Of a stretch of DNA of 64,000 bases, positions 18,794 to 60,562 are shown in pieces. The stretch spans positions 1-64,000 of IMG/VR virus record IMGVR_UViG_3300032240_001991; one strand, 5' to 3'. The notes under the pieces were generated by a model. The model worked only from the letters and a program-made list of their open reading frames with translations. It had not been told where the DNA came from and ran no database searches. The translations under genes were made by a program, and so were the position numbers. The number at the start of each line of letters is the position of its first letter. Positions within the stretch are counted from its first letter, which is position 1.

Positions 18794-19171
18794 ATGTCTA
18801 ATCTTTACTCAAACATCCCACCAAGATCTTCAGCATCAAGCTCTAATCCTACGGTAGAAGTATTCAATAACTACTACAAGTTGCCTGTAAGCATTAGCAA
18901 TAACGACTTAGTCGCTATGATAGGATTTTTTGAAAGCAAAGGATTTGAGCCAGTATCAGCTGAAAGAACAGCAGTTATTATTCTTACGCAAGCCGCAAAA
19001 GACGGATACAGTGCTATGCAAGTAATGGATACACTAAAGGGATTAGATTCAATAGAAATTAGTGGACTAGTTGCTGAAATACTAAACTATAACAGAGTGA
19101 ATACTAGTCTGCTAGGAGTCGTACAATATTACTCTCCATCAGAAGAAGTTATACGTAACATAATTGCATGA
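18794..19171 (+). CDS. Hypothetical protein (tail cluster)
   Basis: ORF coupled to flanking genes. Confidence 0.6.
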   Translation: MSNLYSNIPPRSSASSSNPTVEVFNNYYKLPVSISNNDLVAMIGFFESKGFEPVSAERTAVIILTQAAKDGYSAMQVMDTLKGLDSIEISGLVAEILNYNRVNTSLLGVVQYYSPSEEVIRNIIA

Positions 19172-19605
19172 CACTAAAATTTGCACAAGGTACCTATAGA
19201 TTAAAAAATCCAGAGAAATATATTGGATTAGGATCCCCTACTTATAGAAGTAGTTGGGAATTTCAGGTAATGAAAATGTGCGACGAAAATATTGCAATTA
19301 AAGAATGGGCTAGTGAGAGTGTAAAAATTCCATATCGAGATCCGTTAACTGGAAAACAGACAGTTTATGTCCCAGATTTTTTAGTGGTATTTGTAGATAA
19401 AAATAACAAAAAACGTGCTGAGTTATGGGAAGTAAAACCAATTAGCCAAACATTGAGAGAACATGTTGGTAAAAATAAGTACAATCAAGCACAGTTTGTA
19501 AAGAATCAAGTCAAGTGGGCTACTGCAAGAAATTGGTGTAAACAAAACGGTGTGCATTTTAGAATTATTACTGAAAAAGAATTATTCCATACAGGTAAAA
19601 AATAA
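19168..19605 (+). CDS. gp4: Head completion nuclease, T4 gp4-like (TnsA-type PD-(D/E)xK)
   Basis: KNPEKY.G....YRSSWE, WASE...IPY, YVPDF, EVKP and FRIITEKEL. Confidence 0.85.
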   Translation: MTLKFAQGTYRLKNPEKYIGLGSPTYRSSWEFQVMKMCDENIAIKEWASESVKIPYRDPLTGKQTVYVPDFLVVFVDKNNKKRAELWEVKPISQTLREHVGKNKYNQAQFVKNQVKWATARNWCKQNGVHFRIITEKELFHTGKK

Positions 19606-20100: not shown

Positions 20101-20694
20101 ATGACAAAGAATTTTAAAGAATATCTTGCAGAAAGTTGCAAAAAATGGGACTTCCGTATCAAAGTTGCGGGCGAATTTAATGAAGAAAAAGTTAAAACAA
20201 TGGAAGCTTTACTTAATAAATTCCAAGTTTCTAAATTTAAGAAAGTAGGTACTACTCCAATTCAGTCGTTACCTTTAGACTTTCCTAAGATTAGATTTGC
20301 TGAAGTTACAATTTTTGAAGCTGTAGTTGATTATCCAACTACTCAAATGGAATTGCAGGAATATCTTTGCACAAGTTTAGGCATTACAAAAGATGCATTA
20401 GTTGTTCGTCGTCCAGGAGAGCCATCTGAATCTTATCAAGAACCGCATGAGCCTCACGAAGGTGCATTATTAACTGATAGTGAATACAAAGAAGTTAAGA
20501 ATGCTAAGTTTGACGAGTACTACGGGGACAAGTATAACGAAAGTTTTCTTAAAGAATTAAACGATGTTCTTAAACTCCAGCGTAAAGCTCGAGGAGAAGA
20601 AATTCCTTCAGAAACTAAGGTTCACTTTAATACCGATGACAAGCCTAATAATAAAAGTCCTGTAGAACAGGCTGCAGATCCAAGAAAAAAGTAA
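20101..20694 (+). CDS. Putative virion-internal protein
   Basis: N-terminus MTKNFKEYLAE resembles the T4 capsid-targeting sequence; ATAAATA late promoter ~20075. Confidence 0.55.
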   Translation: MTKNFKEYLAESCKKWDFRIKVAGEFNEEKVKTMEALLNKFQVSKFKKVGTTPIQSLPLDFPKIRFAEVTIFEAVVDYPTTQMELQEYLCTSLGITKDALVVRRPGEPSESYQEPHEPHEGALLTDSEYKEVKNAKFDEYYGDKYNESFLKELNDVLKLQRKARGEEIPSETKVHFNTDDKPNNKSPVEQAADPRKK

Positions 20695-20696
20695 TC

Positions 20697-21365
20697 ATGA
20701 AAAAAACAACATCAAAGATAAAAAAAGAAGCAACAGTGACCTTTACAAAAAACGGTAAAGACATGACCCGTCCGGGCGGCGAACTTGATGTTGAATCTGA
20801 TCCTTTTACAACTAACGAACAAAACAAGAGAGAAAATACCATGGAAAATTTAGACACTAACGCATTGAAATACCTAGCAGGGGTTACAAAAACTATTACA
20901 GAATGCGGAATTCCAATGGCAGGTTCTCATTCTCCCGCAAGCATTAATATTACAGCTAGCAATGGACCAGAACTAACTGGCATGCTTAAGGATCTTATGG
21001 GTTTAGCAGGTATTCATAAATCAGCTGATCCTACAGCAGTGCTAACAACTACTCCAGGTCCAACTATGGCCGCAGCAGATACGGCAGAACCTAGAGAAAT
21101 GCCTTCTATGCAAGATTTAATTAAGAAGGTAACCGGCGGTGAACCAAATCCAGAAATGGTACAAGATAGTATGAACGATAATCGTGTTTATGATAATAGT
21201 CCAGATGAACAAGGTAAAGCAGATAGCAACTGGCCAATTGACGGTGATCGAGATAACAACTTGGTAGCAAACAAAGACATGGTAGTTGATAGAAATAAAG
21301 TAACTGCTGAGAGTTTATTTGCTGCGTACCAAGAATTTATTGCCGAAAATAAAAAAAAAGTTTAA
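20697..21365 (+). CDS. Putative prohead core/internal protein
   Basis: Acidic low-complexity 222 aa with LKYLAG, LMGLAG and ITE motifs; ends at an A9 tract. Confidence 0.5.
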   Translation: MKKTTSKIKKEATVTFTKNGKDMTRPGGELDVESDPFTTNEQNKRENTMENLDTNALKYLAGVTKTITECGIPMAGSHSPASINITASNGPELTGMLKDLMGLAGIHKSADPTAVLTTTPGPTMAAADTAEPREMPSMQDLIKKVTGGEPNPEMVQDSMNDNRVYDNSPDEQGKADSNWPIDGDRDNNLVANKDMVVDRNKVTAESLFAAYQEFIAENKKKV

Positions 21366-21964
21366 TTGAACATATAAACATTCGATTAAAAAATATTTTA
21401 AAAAAATACGGCGAAACACTTGGTGATACAACAACACTATCAATTCCTGTAACTGGAATCAATATACATGGGCAGCCTGTTACGGGTCTGTCATTAGTAC
21501 TAACAAAAGATGATGAGGATGATTTAGAATATTCAGGGGCCGGGTTAAATATATCGTACGACACTAATCTGCCTGAAAATGAAGCATTAGAACTTGTTCA
21601 AGCCATATACGAAGACGGCGCACTCCCTGCAGAAATAAAAAGATTTTTGATTATTTGCGGATTTAGTAAAAGGTCTATAGACTCATGCTTTACGAGTGAA
21701 TCTGGAATGCAAGACATTGGATATGCACATTACGATGCTGAGTCTTTAGAAAAAGAAATTGCTGATTTATTAATTGCCAATAACAAAAAAACTGAAGGCA
21801 TAGACATTTTTGGTGACGAGGACGATGTTGATGACACTGACGAACTTGCGCCAGACGAAACTTTAAAACTTTATAGATGTCCTACTTGCAAACGCCCTAA
21901 TTCTATAACAAGAAAAGATTTGCGGTACGGCATGAGTTGCGACGATTGCGAAACAGATATGTAA
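21353..21964 (+). CDS. Open frame without an ATG start; probable frameshift extension of 20697..21365
   Basis: Frame 2 is open from 21353 (KKSLIEHINIRL...) to TAA 21962-64; C-terminal CPTC/CDDC zinc ribbon. Confidence 0.55.
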   Translation, partial: KKSLIEHINIRLKNILKKYGETLGDTTTLSIPVTGINIHGQPVTGLSLVLTKDDEDDLEYSGAGLNISYDTNLPENEALELVQAIYEDGALPAEIKRFLIICGFSKRSIDSCFTSESGMQDIGYAHYDAESLEKEIADLLIANNKKTEGIDIFGDEDDVDDTDELAPDETLKLYRCPTCKRPNSITRKDLRYGMSCDDCETDM

Positions 21965-22006
21965 ATAAATTACCAAATAGCTGCATTTCTTTGATTAAAT
22001 ATAGGT

Positions 22007-23596
22007 ATGGCTAGTAAAAATCTTGACGGCGCCCTTGTTAAAAAGGCTCATACTAAACAACGATGGACTGAAAAAAATATTCAAGATCTGATGTTATGTC
22101 AAGATCCTGAAAACGGTCCAGAGTATTTTCTTAATAATTTCTTCTTTATTCAACATCCTACCCAAGGTAAGATACAATATAAAGCATACGAATATCAAAA
22201 AGAATTACTAGACAGCTATAATCTTCATCGTTTTAGTGTAAACATGCTAGGACGACAGATGGGTAAGACAACTACTGCGGTAGGCTTCTTACTATGGTAC
22301 GCTATGTTTATGGACAATAGCACTATTTTAATTGCCGCACACAAATATACAGGTGCACAAGAAATTATGCAACGTTTGCGATATGCATACGAAATGTGTC
22401 CTGATTTTATTCGAGCAGGTGTTACAAGTTATAATAAACAAAGTATTGAATTTGAAAACGGCAGTCGAATTGTAGCGCAAACGACTACTGAAACAACAGG
22501 ACGCGGTATGTCTGTTTCGTTATTATACTGCGACGAGTTTGCCTACGTTGAACCTAATATTGCTGTTGAATTTTGGACTTCAATTAGTCCTACGCTAGCA
22601 ACAGGTGGTAAAGCAATTATTACTTCTACTCCTAATAGCGACGAAGATCAGTTTGCTCAAATTTGGAATGAAGCTAATAAGAGATTTGACGAATACGGCA
22701 ATGAACAAACTCTAGGTCGAAACGGATTTTATCCTTATAAAGCAGTATGGAGTCAGCATCCTGATAGAGACGAAGTATGGGCTAATACAGAACGCAGTCG
22801 TGTAGGAGACGAGAGATTCCGCCGTGAGCACGAATGTGAATTCTTAGTATTTGATGAAACCTTAATTAATAGTATTAGTTTGTTAGATTTAGAAGGGCGA
22901 GATCCAATAATGAAAATGGGACAAGCTCGTTGGTACAAGAAAATTAATCCTGCAAGCACTTATATTTTTAGTCTAGACCCTAGTTTAGGCACAGGGGGAG
23001 ACTATGCTGCTATTGAAGTAATAGAAGTTCCTAGCATGGAGCAGGTAGCAGAATGGCATCATAACACCACTCCAATACAGTCACAGGTAAGAATACTAAA
23101 GGACATGATTAAGCATGTTGATGATCAGTGCACAGCAATGGGTGTAACTAGTAGCATTTACTATTCTGTAGAAAATAACTCAGTTGGTGAAAGCGCACTA
23201 GTATCTATCAACGAATTAGGTGAAGAAAGTTTTCCTGGGTTGTTTCTTAGCGAACCTATTAAAAAAGGGCACGTTAGACGTTTTCGTAGAGGATTCAACA
23301 CTACGCATTCTGCTAAAATTTCAGCATGTGCTAAATTAAAACAATTAATTGAAACAAAGCAGATTACTATTAATAGTAAAACTTTAATAAGTGAACTTAA
23401 AAGTTTCGTAGCAGCAGGAATAACATTTAAAGCTAAGTCTGGGCAGCACGACGACTTGGTATCTAGCTTATTACTATCTATACGTATGATAATGCTTTTG
23501 CAAGACTGGGATCCTTCTATATACGAAAAGATGAGAGACCATACCGGATTAGAAGAACACGACCTACCAATGCCCATTTATATTAGTACATTCTAG
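22007..23596 (+). CDS. gp17: Terminase large subunit
   Basis: LGRQMGKTT Walker A, LLYCDEFA Walker B, TSTPN, SLDPSLGTGGDY and HDDLV nuclease motifs. Confidence 0.95.
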   Translation: MASKNLDGALVKKAHTKQRWTEKNIQDLMLCQDPENGPEYFLNNFFFIQHPTQGKIQYKAYEYQKELLDSYNLHRFSVNMLGRQMGKTTTAVGFLLWYAMFMDNSTILIAAHKYTGAQEIMQRLRYAYEMCPDFIRAGVTSYNKQSIEFENGSRIVAQTTTETTGRGMSVSLLYCDEFAYVEPNIAVEFWTSISPTLATGGKAIITSTPNSDEDQFAQIWNEANKRFDEYGNEQTLGRNGFYPYKAVWSQHPDRDEVWANTERSRVGDERFRREHECEFLVFDETLINSISLLDLEGRDPIMKMGQARWYKKINPASTYIFSLDPSLGTGGDYAAIEVIEVPSMEQVAEWHHNTTPIQSQVRILKDMIKHVDDQCTAMGVTSSIYYSVENNSVGESALVSINELGEESFPGLFLSEPIKKGHVRRFRRGFNTTHSAKISACAKLKQLIETKQITINSKTLISELKSFVAAGITFKAKSGQHDDLVSSLLLSIRMIMLLQDWDPSIYEKMRDHTGLEEHDLPMPIYISTF

Positions 23597-23611: not shown

Positions 23612-25306
23612 ATGGACGCTATTGAACTTATTTCTCAGGACCTTTTTGATAAAGTACGCAGTCGTTTTACCAACCTAGAAATGGGCGACGAAAACGGAAA
23701 CGTAACATCAGATCCAAGGCAAGCACGTTTCTTTGATTTTAATTTTACTATGGAAGGAACCGATCTTGGTCGGGTTAGTATTAGTATTAACGAAAGAGGT
23801 GCTCTTAAGCTTTATTACGGAAAAGGAATTTTAGAAGGACACGAACCGGGGACACAAAAAATCTGGTTTAGTTTCTTAAAAGAAATGCGCATGTTTGCCA
23901 AACGCAGACTATTAAGATTTGATACTAGAGATATTACTAAATCAAACTTAAACAAAGAAGATTTTCAATTTTTAGCGTCAACCGGAAGTAAGGAAGATAA
24001 TATGTCAGAAAGCAAAATGTTTGGTAGTAGTAAAACTAGTCACCGCATATTAGAAAAAACACGTTTAATTATTCGCCATAGCAGTCCTGTAGAAGAAGGA
24101 CAACGTCATCGTAATATACATGCAATTTATGTAGAAAATGCTGACGGAGAACGTTTTAAATATCCGTTTATACATTTAACAGGTGCAAAAGCCATGCAGC
24201 GTCATGTGGCTAATGGCGGTAGACCTCACGATGTACACGGCCTAGCTATTGTTAAAATGAGCGAAGAAATTGCTCAACTTTCTGCTTTCAAGAGACATGT
24301 TGGTCACAATCATGATACTATGCAAAATGAAGCTAACGAAATTATGGAACGTGCATGTTCTAAACTTGAAAGCTTAAAACATATGATGGAAAGAGTCTGC
24401 GGACAACGTGGATACGAAGAATGGAAAGGTGCTAACGATACCTTTGAAAACAATGATGTAGTAATGGACGAAGCCACGTTAGAAAGTTACAAAGATAAAT
24501 TTACAGTTAGAAATTTTAAAGAAGATCTAGCACAATACTTCCCGCTAATACATAAAATTATGCAGGAAACAAGTGAAGTAGACCTCGAAGAATACGTAGG
24601 TGAAACTAAAGAAGAAACCTGCAATGAATGTGGAATGCTTGAAAGCAGTTGCGAATGCGACCACGAAGAAAAAGATGTTAAAGAATTTGCAGAATTTGAA
24701 AGTTGGGTCAGTAAAATAATAGAAAATCGTTTACCCGACGACGTACTTGATAAACTCAAAGACCTACTAAGTCAAGACACAAAAGCTGGATTAGATGGAA
24801 CAAATGCTGTTCAATCTTTAAAAGGCATTGGTATTGACGACAGTGAACTTGAAGACATGATCGATAAAGCCGGGCCAGAAGGCGACCTTAAAACCATCGT
24901 TAACATCTGGTTGAATAATAAAGGTGATAAAGAATCAATTAAGTATCTAGGTCTACAATCAACACAAAGTGCTCCTGCACCAACACCGCCTCCGCAGGAA
25001 CAACCTCCTGCAGGTGCTGAGCCGGGAACAAATCCTCCGTCTCCAGTTGAAGAAAAAGAAGATACCGAGGAAAATAAAAATCCTAGCTTAAAAGATATTG
25101 CAGAAATGGTAAAAAGTTTTTATGATAGAGAAACTGGTAAATTCCCACTAGGAGAAACTGGCGTTGTAACTAAAATTAGAAAAGAGCTAGGCGAATGGGC
25201 TGGAGACTTAGCAGAAAAATTAGTAAACAAGCTATCCAAAAAAGATGAACCATTGCATACCGAATCAATCGAAAGACTCAAATTTTTATCTGGTTTGAAA
25301 AAATAA
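23612..25306 (+). CDS. Large hypothetical protein (late)
   Basis: 564-aa ORF after a late promoter; acidic and Pro-rich linkers; C-terminal ERLKFLSGL. Confidence 0.65.
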   Translation: MDAIELISQDLFDKVRSRFTNLEMGDENGNVTSDPRQARFFDFNFTMEGTDLGRVSISINERGALKLYYGKGILEGHEPGTQKIWFSFLKEMRMFAKRRLLRFDTRDITKSNLNKEDFQFLASTGSKEDNMSESKMFGSSKTSHRILEKTRLIIRHSSPVEEGQRHRNIHAIYVENADGERFKYPFIHLTGAKAMQRHVANGGRPHDVHGLAIVKMSEEIAQLSAFKRHVGHNHDTMQNEANEIMERACSKLESLKHMMERVCGQRGYEEWKGANDTFENNDVVMDEATLESYKDKFTVRNFKEDLAQYFPLIHKIMQETSEVDLEEYVGETKEETCNECGMLESSCECDHEEKDVKEFAEFESWVSKIIENRLPDDVLDKLKDLLSQDTKAGLDGTNAVQSLKGIGIDDSELEDMIDKAGPEGDLKTIVNIWLNNKGDKESIKYLGLQSTQSAPAPTPPPQEQPPAGAEPGTNPPSPVEEKEDTEENKNPSLKDIAEMVKSFYDRETGKFPLGETGVVTKIRKELGEWAGDLAEKLVNKLSKKDEPLHTESIERLKFLSGLKK

Positions 25307-60486: not shown

Positions 60487-60562
60487 TGGTGGGTCCTGAG
60501 GGGTTCGAACCCTCGACAAACGGATTAAAAGTCCGCTGCTCTACCGACTGAGCTAAGGACCC
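60487..60562 (-). tRNA. trnK: tRNA-Lys (anticodon TTT) with encoded CCA
   Basis: GGGTCCTTAGCTCAGTCGGTAGAGCAGCGGACTTTTAATCCGTTTGTCGAGGGTTCGAACCCCTCAGGACCCACCA folds as a 76-nt cloverleaf. Confidence 0.95.

What the first reader, a model, noticed from the sequence alone, without database searches (positions are those of the whole stretch)
20697..21964. A9 tract joins two ORFs: candidate programmed -1 frameshift or transcriptional slippage
Seen: ORF 20697 ends AAT AAA AAA AAA GTT TAA (nine A at 21351-59). The -1 frame is open from 21353 to 21964 (about 200 codons, ending in a zinc ribbon) and has no ATG. A -1 ribosomal slip on A_AAA_AAA, or insertion of one A, gives ...ENKKKSLIEHINIRL..., a ~420-aa fusion. 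Known: phages use -1 shifts to make two forms of assembly proteins, and A9 runs support RNA polymerase slippage. No obvious stimulatory hairpin follows, so a homopolymer sequencing error remains possible.
Basis: partly seen in the sequence, partly recalled or inferred. Interest (0 to 1): 0.62.

Follow-up and report, generated by a model that had tools for sequence, protein, structure and literature searches.

The report
Poly-A run splits phage protein gene
In an uncultured giant phage, a run of nine A's separates a conserved, floppy protein gene from a real protein-coding tail that has no start codon of its own, so polymerase or ribosome slippage probably makes a minor long form; this is a known kind of trick and could not be proven here.

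Summary
ORF 20697-21365 (222 aa) ends AAT AAA AAA AAA GTT TAA. The -1 frame is closed by TAA at 21350-52, then open from 21353 to 21964 (203 codons), with no ATG/GTG/TTG for 98 codons.

The downstream frame is real coding sequence. Its codon usage is typical, and residues ~18-142 match a family of small phage proteins. AlphaFold places a confident fold across the start-less part, and the end is a zinc ribbon.

The upstream ORF is the disordered core of a family of at least 503 jumbo-phage proteins encoded just before the large terminase. About 90% of listed members carry in-frame, swappable C-terminal tails. A related phage carries the same domain in frame inside the gene after the terminase.

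A9 is the longest kind of homopolymer in the 326-kb genome. It is the only one of 21 lysine runs written AAA AAA AAA.

My best reading (about 0.45) is that slippage at A9 adds the tail to a minority of molecules, giving 222-aa and 422-aa forms.

Rivals:
- an ATT start overlapping the stop (TAATT, where the genome often has TAATG);
- a fresh break;
- a true A10.

The parts
20697..21365 (+). Upstream ORF P0001 (222 aa). It is the conserved core of a large family of jumbo-phage proteins encoded just upstream of the large terminase. It is predicted mostly disordered, with short conserved helices.
   Evidence: 503 relatives; mean pLDDT 59.7, helices 90-103 and 204-220. Same position as PA5oct gp281, a virion protein by mass spectrometry, but similarity there is limited to one weak motif.
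21351..21359 (+). A9 run encoding KKK. It holds the in-phase slippery heptamer A_AAA_AAA at 21353-21359 and is the candidate site of RNA polymerase slippage or a -1 tandem tRNA-Lys slip.
   Evidence: one of three 9-mers, none longer; the only all-AAA KKK of 21 lysine runs.
21350..21352 (+). TAA in the -1 frame. It closes that frame just before the run, so entry into the downstream frame is possible only within the run.
21363..21365 (+). 0-frame TAA stop of P0001, one codon after the run. It lies at the place where short-form relatives also stop.
21353..21964 (+). -1-frame ORF P0002 (203 codons plus stop) with no ATG/GTG/TTG in its first 98 codons.
   Evidence: the leader 21353-21646 scores as coding: 0.316 against 0.386 +/- 0.108 for real genes.
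21404..21778 (+). Alpha/beta domain of unknown fold (P0002 residues ~18-142; motif GFS..SE.GMQD.G.A.YDA). It is homologous to stand-alone small phage proteins and to an in-frame insert in the post-terminase protein of a related phage.
   Evidence: E 7e-9 to L015; pLDDT 87-92 over residues 11-50; no known fold.
21848..21952 (+). C-terminal zinc ribbon (CPTC...CDDC), preceded by an acidic linker.
   Evidence: P0018, 56% identity over residues 166-200; weak Lar_restr_allev hit, E 0.071. Low pLDDT.
21365..21367 (+). ATT in the P0002 frame, overlapping the P0001 stop by one base (TAATT). It is the rival candidate for a non-canonical or former start; further ATA at 21374 and ATT at 21380.
   Evidence: no Shine-Dalgarno; 19 TAATG junctions in this genome; the homologs' Met aligns to P0002 residues ~10-14.
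21361..21390 (+). Weak A/U hairpin starting 2 nt after the run. It is not a credible frameshift stimulator.
   Evidence: -6.4 kcal/mol, z -0.8.
21707..21964 (+). 85-aa ORF that public gene callers report here (P0011). It starts inside the conserved domain and so truncates it.
22007..23596 (+). Large terminase subunit, the anchor of the conserved gene order.
23612..25306 (+). Post-terminase protein (564 aa). Its ortholog in L015 (803 aa, 55% identity) carries the P0002-type domain in frame where this one has only a 20-residue Cys-rich insert.
60487..60562 (-). Phage-encoded tRNA-Lys(UUU), the tRNA that reads AAA in both frames at the slip site.

Best explanation
The two ORFs form one expression unit. 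P0001 is the disordered, motif-bearing core of a protein family that uncultured jumbo phages encode just before the large terminase. That family normally ends in an in-frame, exchangeable C-terminal tail module. In this phage the tail is a new alpha/beta domain, an acidic linker and a zinc ribbon, and it lies in the -1 frame right after an A9 run. Standard decoding gives the 222-aa short form, which ends where short-form relatives end. A minority of molecules gain the tail in one of two ways. Most likely, RNA polymerase adds one extra A while transcribing the nine-A tract. Alternatively, two tRNA-Lys slip back one base on A_AAA_AAA. Either route gives a 422-aa long form, ...ENKKK-SLIEH.... Shown here: the sequence anatomy, that the tail is coding and conserved, that it lacks a canonical start, that the family has tails, and that the same domain is fused in frame in a related phage. 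Inferred: that slippage happens, at what rate, and that the long form is useful.
For: (1) The tail frame is coding from its first codons: codon model, homologs aligned from residue ~18, and an AlphaFold fold spanning residues 4-148 with pLDDT 87-92 over 11-50. The first ATG/GTG/TTG is at codon 99, and no candidate start has a Shine-Dalgarno, although 37% of this genome's genes have one against 8% background. (2) The frame opens exactly inside the run, and the heptamer is in phase. (3) A9 is the longest class of homopolymer in 326 kb. The genome otherwise breaks up lysine runs (commonest pattern AAA AAG AAA), and this is the sole all-AAA run of 21. (4) In the P0001 family, 96 of 109 listed members with the end motif have in-frame tails of 31-263 aa and only 10 stop there. 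Tails are modular: ClpS in P0097, and a 70-aa basic module shared with the post-terminase protein of L015 (E 2e-19). (5) The same domain sits in frame inside the post-terminase protein of related phage L015. (6) The 203 codons remain open despite a very long branch, which argues for translation through most of its history. (7) A9 is the same in a Logan contig that is 100% identical over 6,669 nt, and the exact 222-aa product is held by JGI/IMG, ENA and Logan. No other long start-less ORF exists in the genome. (8) Literature: runs of 9 A or T slip efficiently with bacterial RNA polymerase (PMC5009743). The closest precedent is C. rodentium tssM1, which has a poly-A run just before its stop and makes two length variants (PMC4256274). 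No RNA polymerase gene was found in the record, and distant kin PA5oct uses the host enzyme (PMC7318152). Near-cognate starts give only 0.02-3% of AUG in E. coli (bioRxiv 10.1101/063800), so slippage would be the larger route.
Against: No relative shares the shift site or the downstream ORF. All short-form relatives go straight to the terminase, so there is no evolutionary conservation. No stimulatory structure follows the run, and no upstream Shine-Dalgarno-like element is visible. A_AAA_AAA is less shift-prone than A_AAA_AAG in E. coli (PMC5009743), and E. coli RNA polymerase slipped only weakly on A8 in one reporter study (PMC6260861). Most relatives of the tail domain are stand-alone ATG genes (12 of 13 IMG/VR loci), and their Met aligns about 10 residues after the junction. 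An in-frame ATT overlaps the stop in the genome's habitual coupling geometry. None of 120 family members has this domain as a tail. P0002 departs from the near-invariant GRASYDA motif (GYAHYDA) and has a very long branch, which could mean decay. No DNA or RNA reads were seen.
Confidence: 0.45

Rival explanations
1. P0002 is a separate gene that starts at a near-cognate codon. The candidates are ATT at 21365, overlapping the P0001 stop as TAATT, or ATA at 21374 or ATT at 21380. It would be translated by ribosomes that terminate on P0001 and reinitiate. The A9 would then be only the lysine-rich end of P0001.
For: Stand-alone ATG homologs are the rule, and their Met aligns to P0002 residues ~10-14. 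TAATG one-base overlaps are the second commonest gene junction in this genome, with 19 cases, one of them three genes upstream at 19605. The P0001 stop sits where short-form relatives stop. The family end is lysine-rich in many members.
Against: No Shine-Dalgarno. No other gene in the genome appears to need a non-canonical start. Near-cognate initiation is 0.02-3% of AUG in E. coli, and only two such genes are confirmed there (bioRxiv 10.1101/063800). This reading leaves it to coincidence that the only all-AAA lysine run lies 6 nt upstream, in phase.
Confidence: 0.2
2. The locus is freshly broken and the tail is not purposefully expressed. Either a once-fused gene lost one A from an A10 run, or a once-separate gene lost its ATG (ATG to ATT). 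Any slippage product would be incidental.
For: The arrangement is a singleton. P0002 has a very long branch and departs from two near-invariant residues. Homopolymers are the most indel-prone sites. The truncated P0001 keeps the whole conserved core, so the break would be harmless.
Against: 203 codons stay open in a 38% GC genome. Codon usage is typical and the fold is confidently predicted, so the break would have to be very recent. It is the only such case in about 300 genes. The state is identical in several assemblies.
Confidence: 0.15
3. The true genome, or much of the phage population, has A10 and one continuous 422-aa gene. A9 would be a homopolymer miscall or a minority allele fixed by the assembler.
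For: The frame break lies exactly in the longest homopolymer. The fused architecture is the family norm. The reading frames differ by a single A.
Against: A Logan contig built by a different assembler is 100% identical over 6,669 nt, including the A9. The exact 222-aa product is held by JGI/IMG, ENA and Logan, and no 422-aa product turned up in the HMMER search of 1.84 billion representatives. No other broken gene in 326 kb points to error-prone data. The genome has no run of 10 or more anywhere. It is not known whether these assemblies come from different samples.
Confidence: 0.1

Closest known systems
Citrobacter rodentium tssM1 transcriptional frameshifting (poly-A run just before the stop; PMC4256274)
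   Same: A run of A's lies just upstream of a premature stop. The C-terminal domain is encoded in another frame, and insertion of an extra A restores it. Short and long forms come from one locus.
   Different: The run is A11 there and A9 here. In tssM the downstream part is the canonical, conserved C-terminal domain of the same protein; here the tail is a lineage-specific module found nowhere else on this family. Slippage and the need for both forms were shown experimentally there and are only inferred here.
Thermus thermophilus dnaX transcriptional slippage at a nine-base run (reviewed in PMC5009743)
   Same: Same run length (9), which matches the RNA-DNA hybrid length. Slippage gives a mixed mRNA population and two protein forms with a shared N-terminus.
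   Different: In dnaX the long form is the 0-frame product and slippage gives the short form; here it is the reverse. dnaX recoding is conserved across relatives, and this site is not.
Phage structural proteins with frameshift-made C-terminal extensions (T7 capsid 10A/10B, Listeria phage PSA capsid and tail proteins, tail assembly chaperones G/GT; from my own knowledge and PMC5009743)
   Same: A late-region phage gene gives a major short form and a minor C-terminally extended form with a shared N-terminus, set by a slippery site near the end of the short ORF.
   Different: Those sites are conserved within their phage groups, and several have stimulators. The protein here is a disordered protein of unknown role, not a capsid, tail or chaperone protein with a defined function, and its virion association rests only on its position matching PA5oct gp281.
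AUU-initiated genes (E. coli infC, pcnB) and TAATG-type translational coupling
   Same: An in-frame ATT overlaps the upstream stop by one base, the same geometry as this genome's 19 TAATG junctions.
   Different: No Shine-Dalgarno, and no other non-canonical start in the genome. infC's AUU serves autoregulation by IF3, and nothing similar is evident here.

Membership tests
Programmed -1 ribosomal frameshift site | Slippery heptamer X_XXY_YYZ in phase with the 0 frame | tested here: met
   A_AAA_AAA at 21353-21359 with 0-frame codons AAA (21354-56) and AAA (21357-59).
Programmed -1 ribosomal frameshift site | Stimulatory hairpin or pseudoknot about 5-9 nt downstream, or an upstream Shine-Dalgarno-like element | tested here: not met
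   Only a 10-bp A/U hairpin, starting 2 nt after the run, -6.4 kcal/mol, z -0.8. No GGAG/AGGA in the 20 nt upstream.
Programmed -1 ribosomal frameshift site | Shift site and overlapping ORF conserved in relatives | tested here: not met
   Relatives L003-L006, L015 and L029-L034 lack both. No other genome holds a P0002-like ORF after a P0001-like gene.
Productive transcriptional slippage site | Homopolymeric A or T run of about 9 or more in the coding strand | tested here: met
   A9 at 21351-21359. The threshold comes from PMC5009743.
Productive transcriptional slippage site | The 0-frame stop is close to the run, and a long ORF lies in the frame reached by one inserted base | tested here: met
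   Stop at 21363-65. The -1 frame is open for 203 codons from 21353.
Productive transcriptional slippage site | mRNA population with varying run length while the DNA is uniform | not testable with these tools
Non-canonical (AUU/AUA) start with stop-start coupling | Near-cognate codon in frame at or next to the upstream stop | tested here: met
   ATT at 21365-67 overlaps TAA at 21363-65. There are 19 TAATG junctions in the genome.
Non-canonical (AUU/AUA) start with stop-start coupling | Ribosome-binding site, or other genes of the genome using such starts | tested here: not met
   No Shine-Dalgarno before any candidate. No other long start-less ORF that looks coding.
Homopolymer assembly error | Run length differs between independent assemblies or reads | tested here: inconclusive
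   The Logan contig and the ENA and IMG products all carry A9. It is not known whether they are independent samples. No length variants were found in IMG/VR or JGI contigs, with the window's own record excluded. Reads were not available.
P0001 family (pre-terminase disordered protein of uncultured jumbo phages) | Conserved motifs (..PASINITA.SGPELTGMLKD.M.LAG.., DSMND, YDNSP.E, Y..F[VI].E..KK) and a position between the gp282-like gene and the large terminase | tested here: met
   Alignments A1, A3 and A4; E 6e-76 to the profile; gene order.
P0002 domain family (small phage proteins with GFS..SE.GMQD.GRASYDA) | The conserved C-terminal helix-loop motif plus the N-terminal beta sheet | tested here: met
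   15 invariant columns are kept; E 2.7e-5 to 9.5e-4 library-wide; E 7e-9 pairwise to L015. It departs at two near-invariant residues (GYAHYDA in place of GRASYDA).

The most novel reading that the evidence does not exclude
The pre-terminase disordered protein family is a general carrier that takes exchangeable cargo domains (ClpS-like, zinc-binding, the new GMQ domain) into the virion or assembly machinery of jumbo phages. This phage would use slippage at A9 to set a fixed low ratio of cargo-bearing to cargo-free carrier, that is, frameshift-dosed cargo loading.
Probability: 0.1. Interest if true: 0.7.

Novelty: new member of a known kind. Interest (0 to 1): 0.4.

Why it matters
If slippage is confirmed, this would be a clear natural case of a poly-A slippage site in a jumbo phage that attaches a folded domain to only a fraction of a disordered, probably virion-associated protein. 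That would add to the few recoding events in phages outside the tail-chaperone and capsid genes.

The work also has practical value whatever the mechanism. Public gene calls here (a 222-aa ORF and an 85-aa ORF) miss two thirds of a conserved domain.

It also defines two uncharacterised families. One is a carrier family of at least 503 members with swappable tails next to the terminase. The other is a small domain with no known fold. Both can be tested in cultured relatives such as PA5oct-like phages.

Tried and rejected
- **P0001 and P0002 against the phage collection:** tblastn found nothing.
- **P0002 as a single protein in IMG/VR and the word search:** nothing. Only the full HMMER search found relatives.
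- **Pfam and PHROGs:** no family for either ORF beyond weak hits.
- **Fold searches with the P0002 model:** no credible match. Foldseek PDB best E 0.14; VIA-align best Z 4.4; ESM Atlas best TM 0.35.
- **PDB profile search with the P0001 family:** only low-complexity matches to designed armadillo repeats.
- **PA5oct gp281 against P0001 and P0002:** no significant BLASTP match. hhalign found a single short motif at 3% probability, so the link rests on gene order.
- **P0002 against the acidic tail of the closest P0001 relative (P0003):** no similarity.
- **Exact-pattern scans for A-run length variants (6-13 A) in IMG/VR and JGI metagenome contigs:** no match, with the window's own record excluded.
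- **Other long start-less stretches (71406, 83491, 192625):** they look like non-coding shadow frames, not further split genes.
- **Tree of the domain:** it places P0002 beside the embedded L015 copy, but with weak support (46/63) and a very long branch. I do not use it as evidence.
- **The fused 422-aa sequence:** not folded or searched, because it has no reference. It cannot be read letter for letter from the DNA.

Full report
**What the window is.** The window is the first 64 kb of a 326,658-bp IMG/VR virus record with 38% GC. Its large terminase is about 65% identical at the DNA level to those of Pseudomonas jumbo phage PA5oct and its kin, and more distantly related to Rak2-like phages. 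The gene order around the finding matches PA5oct: tail tube genes, small genes, a gp282-like gene (20101-20694; 35% identity, E 2e-16), the finding, the large terminase (22007-23596), then a virion-type protein (23612-25306).

**The observation.** It is correct.
- ORF 20697-21365 (P0001, 222 aa) ends GAA AAT AAA AAA AAA GTT TAA, with nine A's at 21351-21359.
- In the -1 frame a TAA at 21350-52 closes the frame. It then stays open from 21353 to the stop at 21962-64 (P0002, 203 codons).
- The two frames therefore overlap by only ten bases, essentially the run itself.
- The first ATG/GTG/TTG in the -1 frame is TTG at codon 99 (21647), and the first ATG is at codon 119 (21707).
- A -1 tandem slip on the in-phase heptamer A_AAA_AAA, or one extra A in the mRNA, gives the same 422-aa product.

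**Is the downstream frame a gene?** Yes, and from its first codons.
- A codon model trained on 187 long ORFs of the same genome scores the start-less leader (21353-21646) at 0.316. Real genes score 0.386 +/- 0.108, and the other two frames score about -1.
- A full HMMER search of 1.84 billion representatives found small proteins of 97-145 aa that align to P0002 residues ~20-140 and share a motif of the form GFS..SE.GMQD.GRASYDA. It also found an 87-aa protein whose zinc ribbon is 56% identical to residues 166-200.
- AlphaFold2 with these relatives gives a confident alpha/beta fold over residues 4-148, with pLDDT 87-92 over residues 11-50.
- The 85-aa ORF that public gene callers report (from ATG 21707) therefore cuts a conserved domain in two.
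- No known fold or family matched, so the domain's function is unknown.

**What the upstream ORF is.**
- A profile word search found 503 relatives of 172-650 aa, all from metagenomes. Where I looked, each lies between the gp282-like gene and the large terminase.
- AlphaFold predicts P0001 to be mostly disordered (mean pLDDT 59.7, pTM 0.20), with short helices at the conserved motifs. The last helix (204-220) runs into the lysines.
- The conserved core ends at a motif Y..F[VI].E followed by lysines. Of 109 listed members with this motif, 10 stop within six residues of it, as P0001 does, and 96 continue in frame with tails of 31-263 aa.
- The tails are a mix of modules: Cys/His-rich motifs, a ClpS domain in P0097 (E 3.5e-9), and a 70-residue basic module that is also the C-terminus of the post-terminase protein of locus L015 (63% identity, E 2e-19).
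- Modules therefore move between the two genes that flank the terminase.

**The key relative, L015.**
- Its P0001 homolog is a short form that stops after ...QKKR.
- Its post-terminase protein (803 aa; 55% identical to the window's 564-aa protein over 335 residues, E 4e-126) carries the P0002-type domain in frame at residues 345-469 (E 7e-9). At that point the window's protein has only a 20-residue Cys-rich insert.
- So this domain is used as an in-frame module of a terminase-flanking protein in this phage group.
- The other 12 IMG/VR relatives are stand-alone ATG genes of 152-171 aa, as are the HMMER hits. They sit among small genes.

**How special is the A9?**
- The genome has three homopolymers of nine and none longer.
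- Lysine is written AAA 67% of the time. Yet of 21 runs of three or more lysines in 294 ORFs, only this one is AAA AAA AAA; the commonest pattern is AAA AAG AAA, and about six all-AAA runs would be expected.
- The genome therefore avoids long A-runs in genes, and the one all-AAA lysine run sits at this junction.
- Two neutral points soften this. The family end is lysine-rich in many members, and slippage a few codons before a stop costs little. One other A9 also lies in frame inside an ORF at 186572.

**Is it an assembly error?**
- Indirect evidence argues against error. A Logan contig from run ERR2848513, made by a different assembler, is 100% identical over 6,669 nt, including the A9.
- The exact 222-aa product is held by JGI/IMG, ENA and Logan.
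- No 422-aa product turned up in the HMMER search.
- The rest of the genome shows no other split gene.
- Whether these assemblies come from different samples is unknown.
- Even if the DNA were A10, slippage on such a run would still be expected to give both forms, only in a different ratio.

**Mechanism.** No stimulatory RNA structure follows. The only hairpin is A/U-rich, starts 2 nt after the run and is no better than shuffled sequence. There is no Shine-Dalgarno-like element upstream.

Transcriptional slippage needs neither.
- Runs of nine A or T are reported to slip efficiently with bacterial RNA polymerase, as in Thermus thermophilus dnaX (PMC5009743).
- C. rodentium tssM1 has the same layout of a poly-A run just before a stop, with the C-terminal domain out of frame (PMC4256274).
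- One reporter study found only weak slippage by E. coli polymerase on A8, and far more by T7 polymerase (PMC6260861), so the rate here is uncertain.
- No RNA polymerase gene was detected in the record, and PA5oct relies on the host enzyme (PMC7318152). The acting polymerase is therefore probably the host's, but this is inference.
- Ribosomal -1 slippage is possible, because AAA re-pairs perfectly and the phage encodes two tRNA-Lys(UUU). A_AAA_AAA is, however, less shift-prone than A_AAA_AAG in E. coli (PMC5009743).

**The main rival.** An in-frame ATT (21365-67) overlaps the P0001 stop as TAATT.
- TAATG is the second commonest gene junction in this genome (19 cases, after 35 ATGA overlaps), and one lies three genes upstream at 19605.
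- The Met of the stand-alone homologs aligns only about 10 residues after the junction.
- P0002 may therefore be, or have been, a separate coupled gene whose ATG is now ATT.
- Against this as the working route: there is no Shine-Dalgarno, no other gene here needs such a start, and near-cognate codons initiate at 0.02-3% of AUG in E. coli (bioRxiv 10.1101/063800).
- By that measure, slippage on a well-expressed late gene would deliver more tail than the ATT would, whatever the locus's history.

**Fresh decay.** It cannot be excluded. The arrangement is a singleton, since every short-form relative goes straight to the terminase. P0002 also sits on a very long branch and departs from two near-invariant residues. 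But 203 open codons with normal codon usage in an AT-rich genome mean that any loss of translation must be very recent.

**Verdict.**
- My weights: slippage-made long form 0.45; ATT reinitiation 0.20; fresh break 0.15; true A10 0.10.
- This would be a new member of a known kind of recoding, not a new kind.
- The by-products are useful whichever reading is right: a large modular 'carrier' family next to the terminase, a new small domain, and a corrected gene model.

Noticed in passing
window 24608-24667 (inside ORF 23612-25306): A 20-residue Cys-rich acidic mini-insert (C..CG....C.CDHEE) sits exactly where the L015 ortholog has the P0002-type domain. Similar Cys-rich motifs occur in the P0001 homologs of L003 (internal) and P0006 (N-terminal), as if small metal-binding knuckles are swappable inserts in these proteins.
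   Followed up: partly
P0023 residues 567-636; L015:2969-5377 residues 730-799: A 70-residue basic module (KPSAGLS...AAAAMWK) is shared between tails of the pre-terminase family and the C-terminus of the post-terminase protein (63% identity, E 2e-19). It recurs in several other tails (P0045, P0096).
   Followed up: partly
P0097 residues 360-429: One member of the pre-terminase family carries a ClpS (Clp protease adaptor) domain in its tail (PF02617, E 3.5e-9, above the curated cut-off).
   Followed up: partly
window 21973-21981; L003-L006 between the P0001 homolog and the terminase: Relatives share a conserved G+C hairpin followed by a T-run (a terminator-like element, CCAAATAGCCTC...GAGGCTATTTTTTT) just before the terminase start. 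The window keeps only the CCAAATAGC part and has lost the stem.
   Followed up: partly
G000 60487-60562 (window, - strand) and G000 73893-201404: ARAGORN finds 31 tRNA genes, including two tRNA-Lys(UUU) and one tRNA-Lys(CUU). It also finds a tmRNA-like gene at 121241-121629 with tag ANDDVYAMELAA.
   Followed up: no
G000 186572-186580 and 107853-107861 (outside the window): These are the other two 9-base homopolymers. The A9 at 186572 lies in frame inside an ORF (..EQKKT..) with no frame break. The T9 at 107853 seems to lie at a gene boundary.
   Followed up: partly
window 19168-19605: A 145-aa protein with a TnsA-like endonuclease N-terminal domain (PF08722, from precomputed hits on relatives) is kept in the same place in all relatives. 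The PA5oct gene at the same position is annotated 'head closure'.
   Followed up: no
L004 3850-3905: In the closest relative, the frame of the P0001 homolog continues after its stop with a short stretch ending ..SC..C....stop. It faintly resembles the last knuckle of the P0002 zinc ribbon and may be a remnant, but it is not significant.
   Followed up: no
G000 as a whole: CheckV's completeness estimate for this 326-kb record is only 36%. That would imply a far larger genome, or more likely a poor reference for this clade.
   Followed up: no
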